Positions 52,789-61,600 of a stretch of DNA of 64,000 nt are shown in pieces (positions within the stretch are counted from its first letter, which is position 1; each line of letters begins with the position of its first letter). Under the pieces are notes generated by a model. It was not told the origin of the DNA and searched no databases. It saw only the letters and a program-made list of their open reading frames with translations. The translations under genes and the position numbers were made by a program. Origin of the DNA: Pocillopora damicornis (Eukaryota); the NCBI RefSeq assembly GCF_003704095.1, contig NW_020843442.1:1-64000 (forward strand), given 5' to 3'.

Positions 52789-53641
52789 AATATTACAATT
52801 CTATTTTTCTCGGTCACATTTAAATCAACACTTATCTTGATCATTTACAATGCCACTCAGTCAAATTAAACTTGAAAGCCTTCAGGTTGTTGCTTGAACT
52901 TTTCTCCACTGTCTTAGAAAGATTTTCCTCTCAGGGAGGAAAATCTTTAAATTTGTGGGAAAACCTTGTAATTTGACTCCTGATGGCAATTGGGTCAAAA
53001 ATGGGTCACAAAGGTCCAAAATTCTCTGATTTAGCTGAGCTGCATCTAAAAACATGTCACATATTTGGTGAAAATTTTATTTTTCCTGTAAATACACATT
53101 TCTTGCCTGTTTTTATAGAGAAAAACACCGCATCATATTTAAGGAAATATTGCTAAGCAATATTTAAGCATTTCCACCTCAGTTATAATAAGACTATACA
53201 CAATTCATGTATCCTCATTGTATCTCCATAGCATTGAGATAATTTTGTAAATACCAAAGAAATCCTCTATTAAAGTGAATTATCTTTACATTTTGTGTTA
53301 TGTGGTCAACTCCCCTTTCCTTGTTATTCTGTTTTTCATGAGAGTAAGGCTCTTTTAGGTTAGAAAAATAAATGTGGATTCACCTCAACCTTTTAACCCC
53401 AGCCTATGTGTAGTGGCTAATTTCTCTTTGCATTGTCACTGTTGAATTGAGCATTAAGATCACAAATATATACAAAAAATATATGAATTGAGCTAGGGAA
53501 AAAACAAAGAGACAACACTTTATCATGACAAGCCTGTTTCGTGATTAGATCATTCTTCGGAAGCTACTTCTATATATTGAGCACTGTAATACGGAAAAAC
53601 GGAAACATAGACTTCTTTATAAAAAATAAAAAATAAAAAAA

Positions 53642-53645
53642 TATG

Positions 53646-53702
<57 letters not shown>
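53642..53702. repeat. (TA)n microsatellite
   Basis: Read directly. Confidence 0.95.
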
Positions 53703-53705
<3 letters not shown>

Positions 53706-54158
53706 CATAAGTATTTATATCATCAACTCAAGGAGCTTCTGACTGATAAGGAAATTTTCCTTGTCAGTACCATACGAAATTTATGGTGAACCGTATGGAG
53801 AATATGCACATTGTTATTGTGTAAAGGATTTAAAGACCAAGAAATATCAGGGATTTTATTGTCATCCGCAAATTTGTAAGTCCCTTTCTTACGTAGCCTG
53901 TTATCTTTTTTCACTGTCGTCTCCGAGCCTAGGTTTCGCGGGTGGTAAAAGTTTTCTGGCCACCATTCATTTTGGAGATACAGGGCTCCATTTAATGGAA
54001 TGTGCCGATTGATAACTACGGACACGTTCACGGTATCATACATAACGTAATCGTAACAAGTCTCGCTCTCGCTCCCACTCCCGCTGAGATTTGAAGTTTG
54101 TTTGGTTTGCTGGGCAAAAGGATCTTTTCGAAGCTGTTATTCTAACGTTTAAGCCATA

Positions 54159-57022
54159 ATGAGCCGTGAGAAGCCATCTGTGTTGATAGACATTATTTCT
54201 GACACCGTCTGACCATGGTAAGTACTGGTAAAATCGATCAGGATTGAAATGATGAGTCATTCTAAGCGTTAACAATTCAGTGAAGCGCAACACTCGTCAG
54301 CTGCATGCCCTGCCGTCAAATCTTGCAACGAACGAGAAGAAATTGCTGTGCGAAGCCGTGATTAAGACGAAAAAATCTTATATCGTGATTAGGAAAAGGA
54401 GAAGTAAATTTGATACTGAAAACGGGATTTCACGGGCCTCGGCAAAATATGCCTTAGATTGTGTTGGAAATCGTTTCCAATTAAATCTTCGCCCTTGGCG
54501 CTCACACAATTGCAATTTTGGGGAAGACCTCAAAAACGCTCTACAGACTGCTAAAAGATATAGGAAACATCCCAAAATTATTCAACGAAAAAAATCTGAT
54601 ATTGGTCAATTTGCACACGGAGAGGTGTACAAAATTGAAAATCAGTGGGTGAAGAACTGTAGAAGAAAGGGCCTCTTAATTTATTCATGGAATCCTGTTG
54701 TGCCTTTCTTAATTCTTGAAAGCATTTTAAGTGGCCCTGTATTCCTTAAGCTGTACTACATTTGGTGATAAACTTTGAATTTGCTCTCCCAAGGCCTTAA
54801 TATTCCCACACTACAGAGCAATGTCAGGCTACATTGCGTTTTAAAAAGATTAGCATCTAATTGTTTTTTTATTTGTGGAAGATCGTGTTTGTCACACTTT
54901 TTTCAGATAGAATGATCATATCCCTTTGTTTTCCTTCAGGTGTTTTGTTGGAAAACGCCATCTGGAGGAGGCCATGAAGGTGTTTTCCAACGACTTGTCA
55001 TTTGTGGTGACATGGAAGCCTTTCTTCCTGAACCCTACAACTCCTGAGGCTGGTATACCTCTCATTCAATACCTGACACAAAAATATGGACCAAGGGCAG
55101 GTGCCATGGCCAAGGATGGGACTAGTCCTCTGACAAAAGCTGGGTTGAATGTGGTAATGATTATAACATCATTTTTGGTATCTAATGCCACATCAAATTT
55201 GGAGCTCCCACATTTTAAGAAATAGAGTACCAAAACAAGCTCAAATTAGTTTCCTACTTACTTTTTAGAACTCCATCTACCCATGGATATACTGAGACTA
55301 TAAGGCTAATAATGCCCCCCCCCCCCCCTCCCTTAGATAAGCAAAAAAAAAAAATTGATCCAGAGCAGAACAGGTAATGAACAACTACAATCATATGAAA
55401 ATTCAAGCTGCAGTGGGCAGTTATAAGAGTGCCACAGAAGATCAAAAGCTCCAGATTCTAGCCATGATTATATCTTTTGTTCATATCCTGGAGCAAGACA
55501 CTTGACTGTCACAGATAACCCTCATGTAACCATGTGACCCCAAAGAGTGACCAGCATCAAAATTCTCCTTACAATATTATTCCTGAATTGTACTTTAGGA
55601 TGACAAGAATAAAGGAAACAACCATTAACTAAAGAAGCTTTTGATTGTTAAACAAATTCTCCTTGTCAGCACTATAGGAAATGTATAGAGAACAGTATGG
55701 AGAATATGCATACTGATGTTGGGGTGTAAAGGGCTAACCACACAGGAGTACAAAGTGTTAGGTATCAACAAACAGTCAGGGTAGTGTACAAATTAGTGGG
55801 ATGTCACTGCCTATGTTGGATGATTATGGTCCAGCAGAGTACTAATTTATCTTATGTTCTTCTTTCTCATAATAGGGCATCAATTTCACAACAGATCGTC
55901 TCATAGTCAACACTTTAAAATCTCATTGTATGCTGGATTATGCCAAGTCAGAGGGGAAGCAAAATCTTCTGGCAGAGAACCTTTTCAAAATATATTTTGA
56001 ACAAGGAAAGAATATCAATTCCACTGATGTTTTGGCACAAGTTGCAGTAGACACTGGGCTCAACATAGATGCTATGGAAAAGTGAGTATCTTTGTCGATA
56101 ATCTTACCCCTTTCCTACATACGAAAGATTATTGAAATATGATTTTAATGCTAAACTTAAGTATGCTCATTTCCTTGGGCATGAGCTGTTTTGTTATTAT
56201 TTACTTGACTAGTTGTTGTATTTACTTTTTAAGATGTTACCACACTTCATATGTCCATATTACTACGTCTTTGTGCATAGGTCATTTGTTCAGTCAGTGT
56301 AATAATAATTTCTCATTAGTAAATGGTTTGAACCAAGGGGTAATATGTGATAGTGGAGTCTGATAGTTGGGTTTAACAAGTCAGTAAAGCCTCTTCATAT
56401 GAGCCTCATTGATCAGGCAGGCCTGGTTTTCAATATCTCAGCGCATCCCTAATTCTCTTAAAAAATCCTGATGTGTTAATATGAACAGGTGATCTGGCCT
56501 CGGATCCTGAGATCTCGGTTTTTCCCTGTAAGATCTCAGGAACCAGGCCAGAAATGTTTTTAGCCCCTTCTCTCATTTAAGTACACAGATTGAAATTTCT
56601 CACATGAACCCAAGACAAAATTTGTCTTGGTTAACAAGCCAGCCTAGTCAACTGGGCTCATGTGAAGAGGCCCTGAGTCATTTATTAAATCCTATTCAGT
56701 CACTCATTTTATAAATTTCCTATGGAAAACATATTTGGTTTTTAAGTCCAGTTCATGTTCTGAACAACACTCATTATTTTATTAGCCAGTTGTTAACAAT
56801 GTTTGCATCTTATTTAGGCACCTGAAGGACAAATCAGTTGTTTCACGAGTGCAAGAGGAAGCCATGGAGGCTCATGATGAAGGAGTCCATGGAGTGCCTT
56901 TCTTCAACATCCACCTTAAAGGAGAAAGCCAGAAGATTGCTGGATTCTCAGGTGCACAACCACCTGAGACATTCAAGAGTATCTTCCAGCAGCTGCTGAA
57001 TAGATTCAAAGCTAGTGTTTAA
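54159..57022 (+). CDS. DsbA/FrnE-like thioredoxin-fold oxidoreductase, probable selenoprotein (UxxC). Exons 54159-54217, 54940-55153, 55876-56081, 56818-57022; 227 aa with Sec18
   Basis: MSREKPSVLIDIISDTV(TGA)PW|CFVGKRHLEEA...WKPFFLNP...NTLKSH...YFEQGKNI...GVHGVPFF...SGAQPPETF. The exons total 684 nt, in frame, with strong GT-AG sites. Confidence 0.9.
55528..55738. mobile_element. Second near-complete copy of the TTAA/CCC-ended MITE family
   Basis: Extended similarity to 10449-10659. Confidence 0.75.
56386..56673. mobile_element. MITE with short terminal inverted repeats in DsbA-like intron 3
   Basis: GCCTCTTCATATGAGCC ... GGCTCATGTGAAGAGGC. Confidence 0.6.
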
Positions 57023-57333
57023 GGTCACACTTCTGACGTAGTTCTACTCTTTTGCACATTGTTAGCTAATAATACTTTTGAAAAAAGAAGCTTTTAGAGC
57101 AAGGGTTTTTTCAGCATTATGGTATATATATAATCAAGAAAAAAAAAGTCTTCTAGGTTACTCAAATCCAGTTTCTGTGGCAATATTTTGACCACTTTCC
57201 TTCTGGTTAGCTTGGCTTGTGCTCATCCAAAGCCTGGATATCTTAAGAGACCAGGCATTGTCTTCTGAAAACTTACCTTTGTTTTAATGCAAGGCTGCTA
57301 ACTCTTCTAGTCTTCTTGTACTTGATGAGTTCA

Positions 57334-57392
57334 AGTGTCTAACATGATTACCTTTGAGAAAACATATTCTCAAGGGTTTGATGATAAGAATT
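57334..57392 (+). promoter_or_regulatory. SECIS element candidate 1 (type I, AUGA_AA_GA)
   Basis: ATGAT at 57344-57348; helix ACCTTTGAGAA pairs with TTCTCAAGGGT; apical AAAA at 57359-57362; 3' TGAT at 57379-57382. Paired by hand. Confidence 0.75.
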
Positions 57393-57582
57393 ACAAGGAA
57401 TTCAAGACAGTACAAGACAACTGAAACTTAAAACACATTTCAATACACGTTGTATGACACAGTTTAGGCCTACAGTGATATGTTATTTCTTAAGATGGAT
57501 GTAGTTAGTTAAAATTTCAAAAGAATGCAAAACCCATTGGACCAAGCAGGTTAGAAAGCTGTAATGTTTTATGAGGCTTGGA

Positions 57583-57664
57583 ACAGTAATGTCAGTGAAG
57601 GTCTGTGACTAAATGATTATCTTGGGATAAATTTGTGGTCATTCTAAGATTTGATGTTGACTGT
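57583..57664 (+). promoter_or_regulatory. SECIS element candidate 2 (type II, GUGA_AA_GA)
   Basis: GTGAA at 57595-57599; GGTCT/AGATT helix; AAA at 57611-57613, 11 nt from the core; mini-stem TGATTAT/GTGGTCA; 3' TGAT at 57652-57655; lower helix GTCA/TGAC and ACAGT/ACTGT. The upper half of helix II pairs poorly. Confidence 0.45.
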
Positions 57665-58640
57665 CACAAAGATGTGGAGGGTGTTTGTGAGTGGCCTCAC
57701 GTTAAAATTGATTTGTAAAGGGACTTTTGCACCAGTCATTGGGCATATGAAAGTAACTGTAGACTTAATGTAGATGACAGCTTTGGAGTAAAAGTGCTTG
57801 CTAAAACTTCAGTGTTGCCTTAATTAACTAAATTTCACTCTGAAGAAGGGCTAATGCTCAAAGTGTCAGTTTTGAAACTCTTAGCAGTGGCCAATTTATA
57901 TTATCAACTCAACTTTTGCAACCAAAATCATCTTGCAAACAGTAGGTCAGCCATGCCATGGCACTGGGTCATATAGAAAATGGCTTGTTCAAATAGTTTG
58001 TAGAAAACGTGATGCTTCTATCTGGACACAGGATCACCAAGGGCATGTGATTTAAATGACCATTTTCAAGCATGCAACCAGTTCTGACAAAGAGGGGTAA
58101 TTTCCCCCCCCCCCCCCCCAGCCCCATCTTAATCAGCTTATTTAGTGTAAAGTACCACTAGTTTGTGGAACATACCACTGGAATCGAAATCCTGTCGGAA
58201 ATAGAGTAAAAATAATGTACAAGGGCCTGTTAGAGTGCAATCTCGTTTGCAGCCAGTTCTACCTTAAGTAAGTAATAAGGAACCCGACTCTTCCTCCCAT
58301 TCCACTCCAAAACCTACGGCTTGGGGAAATGAGAGAGCCTGGGCTCTATGAAGCTGGAACTCATGGTCCCGACGAACTAAAACCCTCATTCCCCAACCTC
58401 CCTTCCCCTTCCCTTTATTCTCTCCTGCGTGCTACAGTCAAATATAAAACAAACACAACGTAACAACATCGACTCACCTTAGATATGAAATTTTATTAAA
58501 AAGTATATAATTATGTATTCACTTTTGAAGAGCGCACGCTCATCTCTTCCAATAAATAATTTCTTGGCTATGAAATGACCGTTAAGAATTACAATTCATT
58601 TATAATCCGTCCACTAAATAATAATTTCTCAGATTGTACA

Positions 58641-61600
58641 TCAACTATCGCCATTGGTTGGACTCACGTTAGCGACGCAAACAATCAGTCTGCTCTTGAT
58701 TAGGTGTGTTTCCACAGTGAGTTCATTGCTTGGTAATTCACTGTCAAGACTCAGGGGGTACACAGATCTGTTACCCTATAAACAAAAGGCAGACACTCGA
58801 TAAGTAATTAATCAGCCAATATTTTGCGTCTAGTGTGGCGTCACGTCTTAGCTTTTCGTCATTCATCGGATACAATCGACTCGCGCTAGGAATGAATCGT
58901 TAAGGGTCGGGTCTGGGACCCGTTTCTCGAAGATCCCGGTAACTTATCGGGGCCGTAAAGCACTTCTGTTTTCATTCAGTACGGGAGTTTATAAGACTTC
59001 GGCTAAAGAAACAAAATGAATTGGTTAGGGTGCCAGAATCTGCTCCGCCATTCTTCATAAATTTTGATTCTAAATATAGCTGTGAGCCCGTTAATTCGCC
59101 GGGACTTTCGAGAAACGGGCCCCAGTGAAATGAGATTGTCTATACGAGGATATCTTCCTTAAAAATTTGGAATTGGGCGTTGGGCATGGTCAGGCCCAAA
59201 TCATCAAACAATCCAAAACATCAAACAATAACCCCCCAAAAAACGAATTTAGACGGCTTTCCTACCAGTTACCGCTACTGATTATGGATTAATAGGAGTA
59301 TACCGTGTATTTCCTCAAAGCTACAAGGCTACTTGACTGTCCGGCGAAGAAAAGCTGTTAATAGTTGCGGCAAAAAGAATTGAAATCTAGGAAGATTTTG
59401 TGATATGAAACGTGATTTAAAAAAGAGGCTCGTGAACAAAGGCGGAAAAAGCTATTTTCCCACAATACTGACCTGAACCAGTGGATACTGTATACTGGAA
59501 TTTAGCAGTATTGAGCGTACTCCATTGTCACCGCAAAAACTAAGACATACTTCATCACCGTAAAAATCAGCTTTCACACAAAATAAAACCACTTTGGTGC
59601 CTATAAGAGATAGAGGCAAATATGTAACAGTTGTTGATCGGCATAGACATACTGGGAATTGCTGGAAACTTAAAGAACATGAGAGACAGTTTACTTAGTA
59701 AGTTTAGTTTGGTTAAGTTTGAAGAATAAACTGATCAACTGGACAAAGTGCTGGAAAAAAAAAAGCAACAACAAGGTAAGTTACACGTTATCGACACAAA
59801 TGCTGATATAATTTACCTGGAGGTGCTTTATTCGAGTTATATTTGATAAGGAAAGTCTCCCTGTCTTTCTCCCCCGGAGCAATACAGCGATACGGCATAA
59901 CCAAGGGGAGCCGTAAAGTTCCGGCTGATTCCAGACATTTCCCCAATGCAGCTTGTAAAGTGTTGTCCATGCTATTAAAAAGGTTGAGATAAAGTAACGC
60001 TAAAAGAATTAGTCTCCCGATAAATAGATACCTTTGCCTTAGATAAACCCTCATAAGTCAATGTAATCTTAACAGTTTTCGGAGATTTCTATAAGATCTA
60101 AAGGTAACCTATCCTTTGTCTATACCATACGATATCCATTCCCCATCTGCACAATCAAGCAACACTCGAGGAGGGAGACTGGGTACCTAAGTCTAAAATA
60201 ACTGAAGAGGAGAAAGGGGGGCTTCAGTCTCTCCACTTCATTCTCTCCTGGGTAAAGCTAAAGATAAACTCACATTGCTAAAGAAAAGATGACTAATAAG
60301 ATCTAACCTTTTTTCGTGTTCTGAGAGCAAATTTTGTATTTCAAAATACTGGTTTCTCACAGCGATTTGTATAGCGGTCTGCTCGTAGTTTGACTGAACT
60401 TTTGTGTCCACACCATGCTTCAATAACACTCCAACAACTTCCTCATGGCCTTTCTTACACGCCTACCAAAAATATACCATAAGTGAAAGTTCATTGTCTA
60501 ATTATCTATTCCTATAAAAAAAGCACGTGTGTTATTCACGATGACCACTGACCCTCATGAGTGCCGTCTCGCCTGCCGGCTGTTGCCAATTGATGTGGGC
60601 CCCACACTCTAGCAGGATTTGCACAGTTTCTGGAAAACCCTGAAAAAAAAACGATAAACTTAGTAGTGCCCATTTGTACTTCACGAAGAGGATGTCTTCC
60701 TCAGCGGAGAACACGCGAGGAGTAACGAGCCGGAAGATAGCTTCAAAGGAAACGACTACCAACCACTTAACAGTCATTCCCTGTCCAGCCTTTTCTACAG
60801 TTGTTCTTTATCACACCGCGGTTAGATTATTGAAAATGAAAAACCAAAATCACATTGGATTTTAAGCCAAGACACAATCACTTAAAGGCTCCTCGTCCGA
60901 GTCGAATGGAAGTTGGAGGTTGGAAGTTCGAATGGAAGGCGGATCGTTGAGATGAAAACAAGAGAACCACGAGAAAAATCCTCGGAACATGGACAAGGGC
61001 CGACAACAAATTCTACCCAAAGAGGGAAGAGGAGGAGCAGACCACAAGGCACAACACGGCGGTGGGAGGCGCGCCCTTTCTTCATTGCACTATCCCTACC
61101 CGCCAAACATTTCTCCACAGACCTGTTCTGCAGCATGCATGAGTGCTGTCATTCCGGTTCTTTTCTGATCAGTGTTTACACCAGCTCCTTTTTTCAATAG
61201 AAGCCTCACGATGTCATCCTTGCCACAAGTCGCGGCCCACATGAGTAGTGTCATTCCTGATGCAGTGTCGATGGTATCCGGATTGAACCCAGGCACAGCA
61301 AGAGCACGCCTCACCAGCAGGGTGTCGCCGTCTCGAATCGCTTGTTTCAAGGCGGCTGAAAGAGACAAGCATCAAGATTTTGTTGGACGAGCTAAATCGT
61401 GGTTTCTGGGTCTTAACTTATTCAGCCTAAAATATTCAAGTTCGTCATTTATAATCCATTTTAATCTTAGCCATCCTTAGCTATCCTTGTACATTATCCT
61501 CTCTTTCTCCCGCACGTCCCTCAAAAATCCTACCCGTGTTTCCCACCATAATGATCAAAATGTAAACCTGTTACCAGACCCATACGGCCAAAGCAAAACT

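What the first reader, a model, noticed from the sequence alone, without database searches (positions are those of the whole stretch)
54159..57022. Hidden first exon with in-frame UGA makes the DsbA/FrnE-like gene a UxxC selenoprotein
Seen: exon 2 begins mid-motif (G|TGT TTT GTT = W-C-F-V). About 720 bp upstream, an ATG-initiated 59-nt exon reads MSREKPSVLIDIISDTV-TGA-P-TG|gtaagt in the matching phase. TGA 54210-54212 sits exactly where the first Cys of the family's D-x-x-C-P-W-C motif belongs, and the rest of the 227-aa frame is intact. Known: DsbA/FrnE selenoproteins have a scattered distribution (algae, some invertebrates, marine bacteria), are absent from vertebrate selenoproteomes and have little functional characterisation. 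Inference: this is a selenocysteine redox enzyme that standard gene callers would truncate or mis-start.
Basis: partly seen in the sequence, partly recalled or inferred. Interest (0 to 1): 0.88.

Follow-up and report, generated by a model that had tools for sequence, protein, structure and literature searches.

The report
Coral DsbA/FrnE-like selenoprotein gene, mis-annotated
This coral gene really does encode a small redox enzyme with selenocysteine at its active site, which gene callers truncate, but the same selenoprotein family is already described in sea anemones and other marine invertebrates.

Summary
The gene has four exons on the + strand: 54159-54217, 54940-55153, 55876-56081 and 56818-57022, giving 227 codons. 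An in-frame TGA at 54210-54212 sits where Cys-form relatives have the first Cys of CPWC.

- RNA contigs from three independent studies show all three GT..AG junctions. They keep the TGA, as does an independent DNA run.
- Seven orthologous loci, six transcript contigs and one genomic, keep TGA at the same codon. Substitutions on both sides of it concentrate at third codon positions.
- The 3'UTR holds two SECIS-like hairpins. The distal one (57598-57674) is conserved and covaries across corals. The proximal one (57335-57398) recurs only in one close relative.
- The genome has two tRNA-Sec genes, a SepSecS gene and a Cys-form paralogue.
- Public protein calls for this gene are truncated to 196 aa or less, or put W at the UGA.
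- The closest solved structure is Deinococcus FrnE (E 1e-29).

It is not new as a kind. DsbA/FrnE selenoproteins were reported in Ciona, amphioxus, Nematostella, Lottia and Capitella in 2010-2012, and the family is in SelenoDB 2.0. The modest extras are the paired SECIS elements, a hairpin just after the UGA, and systematic mis-annotation in coral genomes. Selenocysteine insertion itself was not shown.

The parts
54102..54158 (+). 5'UTR (minimum extent)
   Evidence: RNA contigs start at 54102 (X15) and 54128 (X18). An in-frame TAA at 54150-54152 closes the frame upstream of the ATG.
54159..54217 (+). Exon 1 coding part: Met1 to the first two bases of Trp20
   Evidence: Translation. The GT donor is at 54218. 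The joint 54217->54940 is seen in three RNA runs. The orthologous exon in L011 at 4463-4522 has the same TGA and a gtgagt donor.
54210..54212 (+). UGA codon 18, read as selenocysteine (U-P-W-C redox motif)
   Evidence: Unchanged in RNA and DNA contigs. TGA sits at the same codon in L009, L011, L012, L013, L014, L016 and L017. It aligns with the first Cys of CPWC in Cys forms and in FrnE 5cnw.
54218..54939 (+). Intron 1 (722 nt, GT..AG)
   Evidence: table 5.
54940..55153 (+). Exon 2: completes Trp20, then the resolving Cys21 (CFVGKRHLEEAM...)
   Evidence: Translation. PF01323 matches profile positions 13-53. Joints.
55154..55875 (+). Intron 2 (722 nt), containing a very high-copy repeat at about 55627-55737
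   Evidence: tables 2, 5 and 7.
55876..56081 (+). Exon 3 (helical insert of the DsbA fold)
   Evidence: Translation. PF01323 scores 37 bits at E 3.9e-9.
56082..56817 (+). Intron 3 (736 nt, GT..AG)
   Evidence: table 5.
56818..57022 (+). Exon 4 coding part, including the cis-Pro loop (GVPFF) and the TAA stop at 57020-57022
   Evidence: Translation. PF01323 matches profile positions 143-190. The GVPFF stretch aligns to the GVPFF of FrnE.
57023..57900 (+). 3'UTR (minimum extent; the X18 contig runs about 570 nt further)
   Evidence: X18 record 15 is one 2155-nt contig from 54128, through all joints, to beyond 57900.
57335..57398 (+). Proximal SECIS-like hairpin: AUGA 57344-57347, UGAU 57379-57382, A-rich apical loop
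   Evidence: Folds at -24.1 kcal/mol with z -3.2. Model R1 scores it 24.2 bits at E 0.0024. A counterpart lies at L014 750-825 (36.1 bits) with two pairs changed on both sides. No counterpart was found in L011, L012, L015 or L016.
57598..57674 (+). Distal SECIS: helix I 57605-57609 with 57663-57667, AUGA 57613-57616, 10-bp helix II, apical AAA, UGAU 57652-57655
   Evidence: Rfam SECIS_1 scores it 18.4 bits, below the gathering score. Homologous elements lie in L011 (25.8), L013 (25.7), L015 (29.5), L016 (23.7) and L014. Covariation: 82% of cells paired against 25-45% when slid. It is the only R1 hit in the whole genome.

Best explanation
This is an expressed four-exon gene of the coral host. 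It encodes a 227-residue cytosolic thioredoxin-fold thiol-disulfide oxidoreductase of the DsbA-like/FrnE family.

Codon 18 is UGA and is decoded as selenocysteine, which gives a U-P-W-C redox centre. Recoding is directed by SECIS RNA in the 3'UTR. The conserved distal element at 57598-57674 is the main candidate, and the proximal element at 57335-57398 may assist. The organism's Sec machinery (tRNA-Sec, SepSecS and, by inference, SBP2 and eEFSec) carries out the recoding.

By analogy with DsbA and FrnE, Sec18 is the exposed attacking nucleophile at the start of helix alpha-1, and Cys21 resolves the mixed intermediate into a selenenylsulfide. The enzyme would reduce or isomerise disulfides in substrate proteins, probably in oxidative-stress defence.

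Shown here: gene structure, transcription, retention and conservation of the UGA, coding constraint across it, SECIS conservation, and family membership. Inferred: actual Sec insertion, the catalytic cycle, substrates, and cytosolic location. Location is inferred from the lack of room for a signal peptide, since the motif starts at residue 18.
For: 1. Gene model and TGA. Three RNA studies show all GT..AG joints. Exon 1 has 0 differences in RNA and in an independent DNA run.

2. Conservation. TGA sits at the same codon in L009, L011 (genomic), L012/L013, L014, L016 and L017/L018.

3. Coding constraint across the UGA. Summed pairwise differences at codon positions 1, 2 and 3 are 91, 84 and 208. 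The 11 residues after Trp20 are identical in five of the six compared loci (all but L009) despite several synonymous changes.

4. Cys-form homologues. 33 representatives read ...SD..CPWC.., and the paralogue on C3313 reads SDLSCPWCYVGKRR. In the FrnE 5cnw alignment the site falls on the first Cys of CPWC.

5. SECIS. The distal element gets Rfam SECIS_1 hits in the window and four orthologues. The R1 alignment has 82% of cells paired against 25-45% in slid controls, and a covariation score of 0.308 against at most 0.109. No shuffle in 500 reaches the observed value. The element lies in the transcribed 3'UTR.

6. Machinery. There are two tRNA-Sec genes at 77.8 bits with anticodon TCA and a multi-exon SepSecS gene.

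7. Family. PF01323 matches exons 2 to 4, and FrnE matches at E 1.3e-29.

8. Literature. DsbA selenoproteins with the first Cys replaced by Sec are reported in Ciona, amphioxus, Nematostella, Lottia and Capitella (PMC2874816, PMC3473315).
Against: - There is no protein-level evidence of Sec insertion.
- Rfam SECIS_1 scores are all below the gathering score of 35: 18.4 bits here and 23.7-29.5 in orthologues. The first 7-kb scan listed nothing at E<=1.
- R1 was built from these same sequences, so its high scores on them are by construction.
- No SECIS was found in the short 3'UTR pieces of L009 (about 190 nt) or L017/L018 (327 nt). These contigs probably end before it.
- The read evidence is from assembled Logan contigs, not raw reads, so rare variants could be hidden.
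- One related genomic contig (L010) has an in-frame TAA in exon 2.
Confidence: 0.93

Rival explanations
1. The UGA is a true stop. Exon 1 would carry a 17-codon upstream ORF, and the real protein would start at Met32 (MKVF...). That gives the 196-residue product that public annotations show, a DsbA-fold protein without a redox motif.
For: Public gene calls for Acropora muricata and Montipora foliosa, and many transcript-derived calls, are exactly this 196-aa form.
Against: The stretch between the UGA and Met32 (PWCFVGKRHLEEA) is conserved at the protein level, with changes concentrated at third positions. The in-frame register of the ATG, the UGA and the downstream frame is kept in all orthologues. 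A conserved SECIS lies downstream. The missing part is exactly the catalytic motif of the family. The 196-aa calls are what a caller produces when it treats TGA as stop.
Confidence: 0.03
2. The TGA is a nonsense allele, an assembly error or a mark of a decaying pseudogene in this individual.
For: L010, a genomic contig of a related coral, has a TAA inside exon 2. This shows that broken copies or erroneous contigs exist.
Against: The TGA is unchanged in contigs of an independent DNA run and of RNA runs from three studies. It is conserved in seven other loci from several species. The frame is otherwise intact and under purifying selection, and the mRNA is abundant in polyA libraries.
Confidence: 0.01
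3. The UGA is read through, but by a near-cognate tRNA (Trp, Cys or Arg) or under a variant code rather than by Sec-tRNA.
For: Two database proteins (P0006, P0158) and possibly P0056 show W at this site.
Against: Those W residues come from gene callers that used a code in which TGA is Trp. Their contigs do not translate to them under the standard table. The gene has a SECIS and the genome has tRNA-Sec and SepSecS. Other genes in this window end in ordinary stop codons, and orthologues use TAG or TAA stops.
Confidence: 0.02

Closest known systems
Metazoan DsbA (FrnE) selenoproteins described in Ciona intestinalis, C. savignyi and Branchiostoma floridae (PMC2874816), and in Nematostella vectensis, Lottia gigantea and Capitella teleta (PMC3473315); family 'FrnE (DsbA)' of SelenoDB 2.0 (PMC3965025)
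   Same: Same DsbA-like fold, with Sec replacing the first Cys of CxxC and a eukaryotic SECIS in the 3'UTR. The typical mis-annotation is also the same: the first exon with the Sec-TGA is taken for 5'UTR. [quoted passage not shown]
   Different: This is a reef-building coral (Scleractinia) orthologue, and I found no paper describing it. It carries two tandem SECIS-like elements where the other coral orthologues examined here show one. I could not fetch the published Nematostella sequences, so I could not test direct orthology.
Deinococcus radiodurans FrnE (PDB 5cnw, 5cp1)
   Same: It is the best solved-structure match: E 1.3e-29 over residues 5-198 of the orthologue P0158. It shares the ...D.WSD..CPWC.IGKRR.. 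motif context, the helical insert and the GVPFF cis-Pro loop. [quoted passage not shown]
   Different: It is bacterial, in the Cys form, and 260 aa long. From my own memory, it has a C-terminal tail with an extra Cys pair. The coral protein ends without any Cys in exon 4 and uses Sec.
Escherichia coli periplasmic DsbA (classical disulfide oxidase)
   Same: Thioredoxin fold with a helical insert, and a CxxC motif whose first residue is the exposed low-pKa nucleophile (summarised in PMC2874816).
   Different: The coral protein has no signal peptide, because the redox motif begins at residue 18. The motif is UPWC rather than CPHC. Sequence similarity is only at Pfam-domain level, and NCBIfam DsbA models score far below their cut-offs. 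It is probably a cytosolic reductase or isomerase rather than a secretory oxidase.
Selenoprotein mRNAs with two SECIS elements (SELENOP; Ciona SelW1, PMC2874816)
   Same: Two SECIS-like hairpins lie in one 3'UTR.
   Different: This mRNA has a single UGA. The two elements look like a tandem duplicate found only in the window species and the L014 relative. Whether both are functional is untested.

Membership tests
Eukaryotic selenoprotein gene | In-frame UGA conserved in orthologues | tested here: met
   TGA sits at the same codon in L009, L011, L012/L013, L014, L016 and L017/L018. It is retained in RNA and DNA contigs of the window species.
Eukaryotic selenoprotein gene | Protein-coding conservation continues downstream of the UGA in the same frame | tested here: met
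   Differences at codon positions 1, 2 and 3 are 91, 84 and 208. CFVGKRHLEEA is identical in five of the six compared loci, with only synonymous changes.
Eukaryotic selenoprotein gene | Cys-containing homologues align with the UGA | tested here: met
   33 representatives have CPWC or CPFC at the site. So do the paralogue on C3313 and FrnE 5cnw.
Eukaryotic selenoprotein gene | SECIS element in the 3'UTR: AUGA/GA quartet, helix II of about 10-12 bp, unpaired AA in the apical loop | tested here: met
   The distal element at 57598-57674 has all these features. It is conserved and covaries in orthologues and lies inside the transcribed 3'UTR. Caveat: Rfam SECIS_1 scores are 18-30 bits, below the gathering score of 35. 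SECISearch3 was not available.
Eukaryotic selenoprotein gene | Sec-decoding machinery in the same genome | tested here: met
   Two tRNA-Sec genes with anticodon TCA and a SepSecS gene on C23. SBP2, eEFSec, PSTK and SPS2 were not searched.
Eukaryotic selenoprotein gene | Selenium actually incorporated at the UGA | not testable with these tools
   Needs 75Se labelling or mass spectrometry.
DsbA-like thioredoxin domain, FrnE subgroup (Pfam PF01323) | Domain match over the whole protein | tested here: met
   Exon pieces match profile positions 13-53, 75-139 and 143-190. Exon 3 alone scores 37 bits against a cut-off of 25.6. Full orthologues carry PF01323. FrnE matches at E 1.3e-29. The joined 227-aa model itself was not scanned.
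DsbA-like thioredoxin domain, FrnE subgroup (Pfam PF01323) | C-P-W/F-C redox motif after the first beta strand (..D.xSDxx-C-P-W-C-x-x-G-K) | tested here: met
   The window reads DIISDTV-U-P-W-C-F-V-G-K, with U in place of the first Cys.
DsbA-like thioredoxin domain, FrnE subgroup (Pfam PF01323) | cis-Pro loop (G-V-P) facing the active site | tested here: met
   Exon 4 reads HGVPFFNI, aligned with the GVPFFVL of FrnE. The cis conformation itself was not modelled.
Classical secreted or periplasmic DsbA oxidase | N-terminal signal peptide or export to an oxidising compartment | tested here: not met
   The N-terminus MSREKPSVLIDII runs straight into beta-1 and the motif at residue 18. An in-frame stop lies 9 nt upstream of the ATG. 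No signal-peptide predictor was run.

The most novel reading that the evidence does not exclude
In this coral lineage the single-UGA DsbA/FrnE mRNA may have evolved a three-part recoding apparatus. The parts would be two functional SECIS elements derived from a tandem duplication, both kept with compensatory changes in two species, and a conserved stem-loop starting 3-7 nt after the UGA that acts as a Sec redefinition element. Together they would tune Sec insertion efficiency for a stress-defence enzyme.
Probability: 0.25. Interest if true: 0.45.

Novelty: new member of a known kind. Interest (0 to 1): 0.3.

Why it matters
The practical value is in annotation. In every public coral gene set I saw (Acropora muricata, Montipora foliosa, Oculina patagonica, and this genome's own calls) the gene is truncated and loses its catalytic residue. 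Coral stress-response transcriptomics and proteomics therefore miss or misread a selenium-dependent redox enzyme.

Corals suffer oxidative stress during bleaching, so a correct catalogue of their selenoproteins is useful. It also links reef health to selenium availability.

The paired SECIS elements and the hairpin after the UGA offer a small natural system for studying recoding efficiency. None of this changes what is known about the family in principle.

Tried and rejected
- **Rfam scan of 53000-60000 at E<=1.** It gave no SECIS, only microRNA-like chance hits on a TA repeat and on an intronic inverted repeat. A narrower scan was needed to see the distal SECIS.
- **Loose AUGA..AA..GA pattern.** It matched 287 times against 248 expected, so it carries no information.
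- **The look-up of encoding contigs.** It found nothing for P0013, P0005, P0002 and P0157. I could not inspect the NCBI Montipora and Oculina loci.
- **L009, L017 and L018.** Neither R1 nor a simple scan found a SECIS in them. Their 3'UTR pieces are only about 190 and 327 nt, so this says little.
- **NCBIfam.** It gave only far-sub-threshold hits.
- **mir-200-like hits over the ATG..UGA stretch of L012 and L013.** I take these as a by-product of local hairpin potential, not as a microRNA.
- **Control for the post-UGA hairpin.** The Cys paralogue folds differently at z -0.9. With n=1 this is inconclusive.
- **Other DSBA-domain loci in the genome (C2798, C3136).** They look like GST-kappa/HCCA-isomerase-type genes, not paralogues of this gene.
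- **Joined-exon model.** No search, fold or structure prediction was run on the joined 227-aa model or on the spliced window mRNA. I used exon pieces by reference, natural spliced transcript contigs, and database proteins instead.
Full report
**What is in the sequence**

- An ATG lies at 54159, with A at -3 and an in-frame TAA nine bases upstream.
- It opens a 59-nt coding exon that translates as MSREKPSVLIDIISDTV, then TGA (54210-54212), then P and the first two bases of a Trp codon.
- A gtaagt donor follows at 54218.
- The acceptor ends at 54939, 722 nt downstream. G 54940 completes TGG, and the frame goes on as CFVGKRHLEEAMKVF....
- Two more exons, 55876-56081 and 56818-57022, complete a 227-codon frame that ends in TAA.
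- Pfam's DSBA model PF01323 matches the three larger exon pieces in colinear order, at profile positions 13-53, 75-139 and 143-190. Exon 3 alone is over the curated cut-off.

Nothing was searched or folded as a joined model. I used exon pieces by reference, naturally spliced transcript contigs and database proteins instead.

**Is the gene model real, and is the TGA real?**

The stretch is held by coral and marine-metagenome runs. I laid three RNA runs from three different studies and one DNA run on 53900-57900.
- All three RNA runs contain contigs with the joints 54217/54940, 55153/55876 and 56081/56818, each GT..AG.
- One 2155-nt contig (X18 record 15) runs from 54128 through all junctions and beyond 57900.
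- Exon 1 has no differing letter in the RNA contigs X15 (54102-54216) and X18 (54128-54216), nor in the DNA contig X5 (53900-54262).
- The UGA is therefore present in the mature mRNA and in independently sequenced DNA.
- No alternative first exon joined to 54940 was listed.
- These are assembled contigs, not raw reads, so a rare allele cannot be excluded.

**Comparative evidence**

A phmmer search with exon 3 against 1.84 billion representatives gave 403 relatives.

Cys-form relatives:
- 33 of the listed proteins have the full N-terminus and read ...SD..CPWC..GK...
- A Cys-form paralogue in the same genome (contig C3313) reads SDLSCPWCYVGKRR.

Mis-called forms:
- Many relatives start just after that motif.
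- Two proteins (P0006, P0158) read ...SDTI-W-PWCFVGK.. Their contigs do not translate to them under the standard code, because the W is a TGA.
- The closest coral orthologues in public sets are 196 aa and begin at the Met that corresponds to residue 32 here (Acropora muricata, Montipora foliosa). The Oculina patagonica entry is 130 aa.
- The window's own gene calls are 72- and 145-residue fragments that run into intron 3 (P0170, P0004).

Orthologous DNA:
- I fetched six transcript contigs and one genomic locus, L011.
- Every one that reaches the 5' end has TGA at the same codon, followed by CCN TGG TGY.
- In L011 the exon ends in a GT donor at the same place.

Coding constraint:
- I compared six loci over the 19 codons up to and including the Pro after the UGA, plus the 11 codons after Trp20.
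- Differences at codon positions 1, 2 and 3 sum to 91, 84 and 208.
- CFVGKRHLEEA is identical in five loci despite several synonymous changes.
- Translation therefore continues through the UGA in frame. This rules out an upstream-ORF or 5'UTR reading.

**SECIS**

By eye and by folding I first found a hairpin at about 57335-57398. It has AUGA at 57344-57347, UGAU at 57379-57382 and an A-rich loop, and folds at -24.1 kcal/mol with z -3.2.

Rfam then pointed to a second element at 57605-57667, scoring 18.4 bits on SECIS_1, below the gathering score. It has textbook anatomy:
- a 5-bp helix I;
- an AUGA/UGAU quartet;
- a 10-bp helix II;
- AAA at the 5' side of the apical loop.

The same element is found downstream of the stop in L011 (25.8 bits), L013 (25.7), L015 (29.5) and L016 (23.7). 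The core sequence is strongly conserved.

I built covariance model R1 from five of these elements and searched with it.
- It also finds the L012 copy.
- It finds two hits in L014, at 750-825 and 1032-1111.
- It scores the window's proximal hairpin at 24.2 bits, E 0.0024.
- Genome-wide, the distal element is its only hit.

On the eight-sequence alignment:
- 82% of cells are standard pairs, against 25-45% when partners are slid.
- Six pairs show changes on both sides.
- The covariation score is 0.308 against at most 0.109.
- No shuffle in 500 reaches the observed value.

The alignment was fitted to the model, which leans towards the structure.

The proximal elements of the window and L014 differ by two double-sided compensatory changes in helix II: C-G versus U-A, and U-A versus G-U. 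Proximal-proximal identity is 66% and distal-distal 73%, against 58-64% for cross comparisons.

I conclude that the distal SECIS is the ancestral, conserved element. A tandem duplicate exists in the lineage of the window species and L014. Whether the duplicate works is open. Variants seen in RNA contigs fit this picture. The distal element shows only G57624>A, which turns G-U into A-U. The proximal element carries four variants, and one of them breaks a pair.

**Machinery**

The genome has 234.35 Mb in 4393 contigs. From memory only, those figures match the published Pocillopora damicornis assembly.
- It has two tRNA-Sec genes, at 77.8 bits with anticodon TCA by ARAGORN.
- It has a multi-exon SepSecS gene.

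**What the protein is**

The closest solved structure is Deinococcus radiodurans FrnE. It matches at E 1.3e-29 over nearly the whole length of orthologue P0158. The UGA site falls on the first Cys of FrnE's CPWC, and the GVPFF loop is aligned.

The N-terminus runs straight into the first strand and the motif at residue 18, so there is no room for a signal peptide. I read the protein as a cytosolic FrnE-type thiol-disulfide oxidoreductase or isomerase, not a secretory DsbA oxidase.

By analogy with DsbA chemistry, summarised in PMC2874816, the first residue of the motif is the exposed low-pKa nucleophile. Here it is Sec, with Cys21 as the resolving partner. That mechanism is inferred, not shown.

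**Comparison with what is known**

- DsbA selenoproteins with Sec at the first motif position were described in Ciona intestinalis, C. savignyi and amphioxus in 2010. That paper reports the same mis-annotation, with the Sec-TGA exon sequence taken for 5'UTR (PMC2874816).
- In 2012 they were reported in Nematostella (two genes), Lottia, Capitella and amphioxus. Sponge and placozoan have Cys forms, and vertebrates lack the family (PMC3473315).
- SelenoDB 2.0 lists 'FrnE (DsbA)' among its 23 families (PMC3965025).
- Algal surveys list the family as widespread (PMC7539508, PMC6627142).
- I found no paper on coral selenoproteomes in the library.

This is therefore a new species member of a known selenoprotein family, in a phylum where the family is already recorded.

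**Extras**

A stem-loop is predicted to start 3-7 nt after the UGA in all five spliced orthologous transcripts.
- It folds at -9.3 to -12.7 kcal/mol. The z-score is -2.3 to -3.6 in three of them.
- The stem letters (UGGUGUUUU, then the loop GUUGG, then AAAACGCCA) are the same in the window, read across the exon 1/2 junction.
- L017 keeps the stem through one double-sided change at synonymous sites, U-A to C-G, and two wobble changes.
- L009 forms a stem in a shifted register.
- This resembles the Sec redefinition elements known from other selenoprotein mRNAs, which I recall from memory.
- The signal is confounded by the conserved WCFVGKRH peptide, and the single Cys-form control was inconclusive. 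I give it about 30%.

**Verdict**

Novelty is low, because it is a new member of a known kind. Interest is modest: the value lies in correcting coral annotations, in the paired SECIS elements and in the possible post-UGA hairpin.

The scan's earlier notes s1-768132 and s1-768159 point to the same two SECIS elements. I had found both independently before reading those notes, and I tested them here.

Noticed in passing
window 57335-57398 and 57598-57674; L014 750-825 and 1032-1111: There are two SECIS-like elements about 260-280 nt apart in one 3'UTR that serves a single UGA. They occur in the window species and one close relative only; the other coral orthologues show one. The pair looks like a tandem duplication that predates the split of the two species.
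   Followed up: yes
window 54210-54217 plus 54940-54965 (across the exon 1/2 junction); L012 96-135, L014 21-60, L016 88-127, L017 163-202, L009 121-160: A 9-bp stem-loop is predicted to start just after the UGA in all spliced orthologous transcripts. One compensatory change at synonymous sites is seen in L017. It may be a Sec redefinition element, but the signal is confounded by peptide conservation.
   Followed up: partly
window 55627-55737 (intron 2): A repeat of about 100 nt has summed contig depth of 10^4-10^5 in every RNA and DNA run, with many loose ends at 55627 and 55733-55737. It is a very high-copy short interspersed element of the coral genome.
   Followed up: no
window 56493-56553 (intron 3, - strand): A near-perfect inverted repeat gives sub-threshold mir-605 and lin-4-like Rfam hits. 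It is probably a small foldback or MITE-like element rather than a microRNA.
   Followed up: no
window 53643-53714: A (TA)n microsatellite is scored by Rfam as mir-297/mir-1277-like. This is a composition artefact.
   Followed up: no
L010 265-477 (Logan contig of SRR26849152): The exon 2 orthologue in a related coral carries an in-frame TAA where the window has Gln (YLT*KYG). It could be a broken copy, a nonsense allele or a contig error.
   Followed up: no
L017 28-111 and L018 15-98: In a more distant orthologue (60% identity) an in-frame upstream AUG would add a 28-residue Arg-rich, acid-free extension (MLVRRIAANFRSVKQLARPRHFSTNISR). It looks like a mitochondrial presequence. The window gene has a stop 9 nt upstream of its ATG and no such extension.
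   Followed up: no
L015 380-551 (JGI 3300008006 contig): This contig has exons 2-4 spliced but carries the 3' end of intron 1 upstream of exon 2. It may be a partly spliced transcript or an internal start, and no exon 1 lies within its 551 nt upstream.
   Followed up: partly
G000 C3313:88126-90016 (-), loci L001/L002: This is a Cys-form DsbA/FrnE-like paralogue (SDLSCPWCYVGKRR) in the same genome. C2798:22254-22373 and C3136:345699-345833 hold GST-kappa/HCCA-isomerase-like DSBA-domain exons.
   Followed up: partly
window 56991 (A>G in X15 and X18): A coding variant changes Gln to Arg near the C-terminus (FQQLL to FQRLL). It matches the transcript-derived protein P0153 and is either a polymorphism or a sister-species difference.
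   Followed up: no
window 55325-55340 and 58106-58121: Long homopolymer C tracts (about 15-16 C) lie in intron 2 and in the distal 3' region. No contig of any of the four runs, RNA or DNA, was laid on the bin (55240-55373) that holds the first tract.
   Followed up: no
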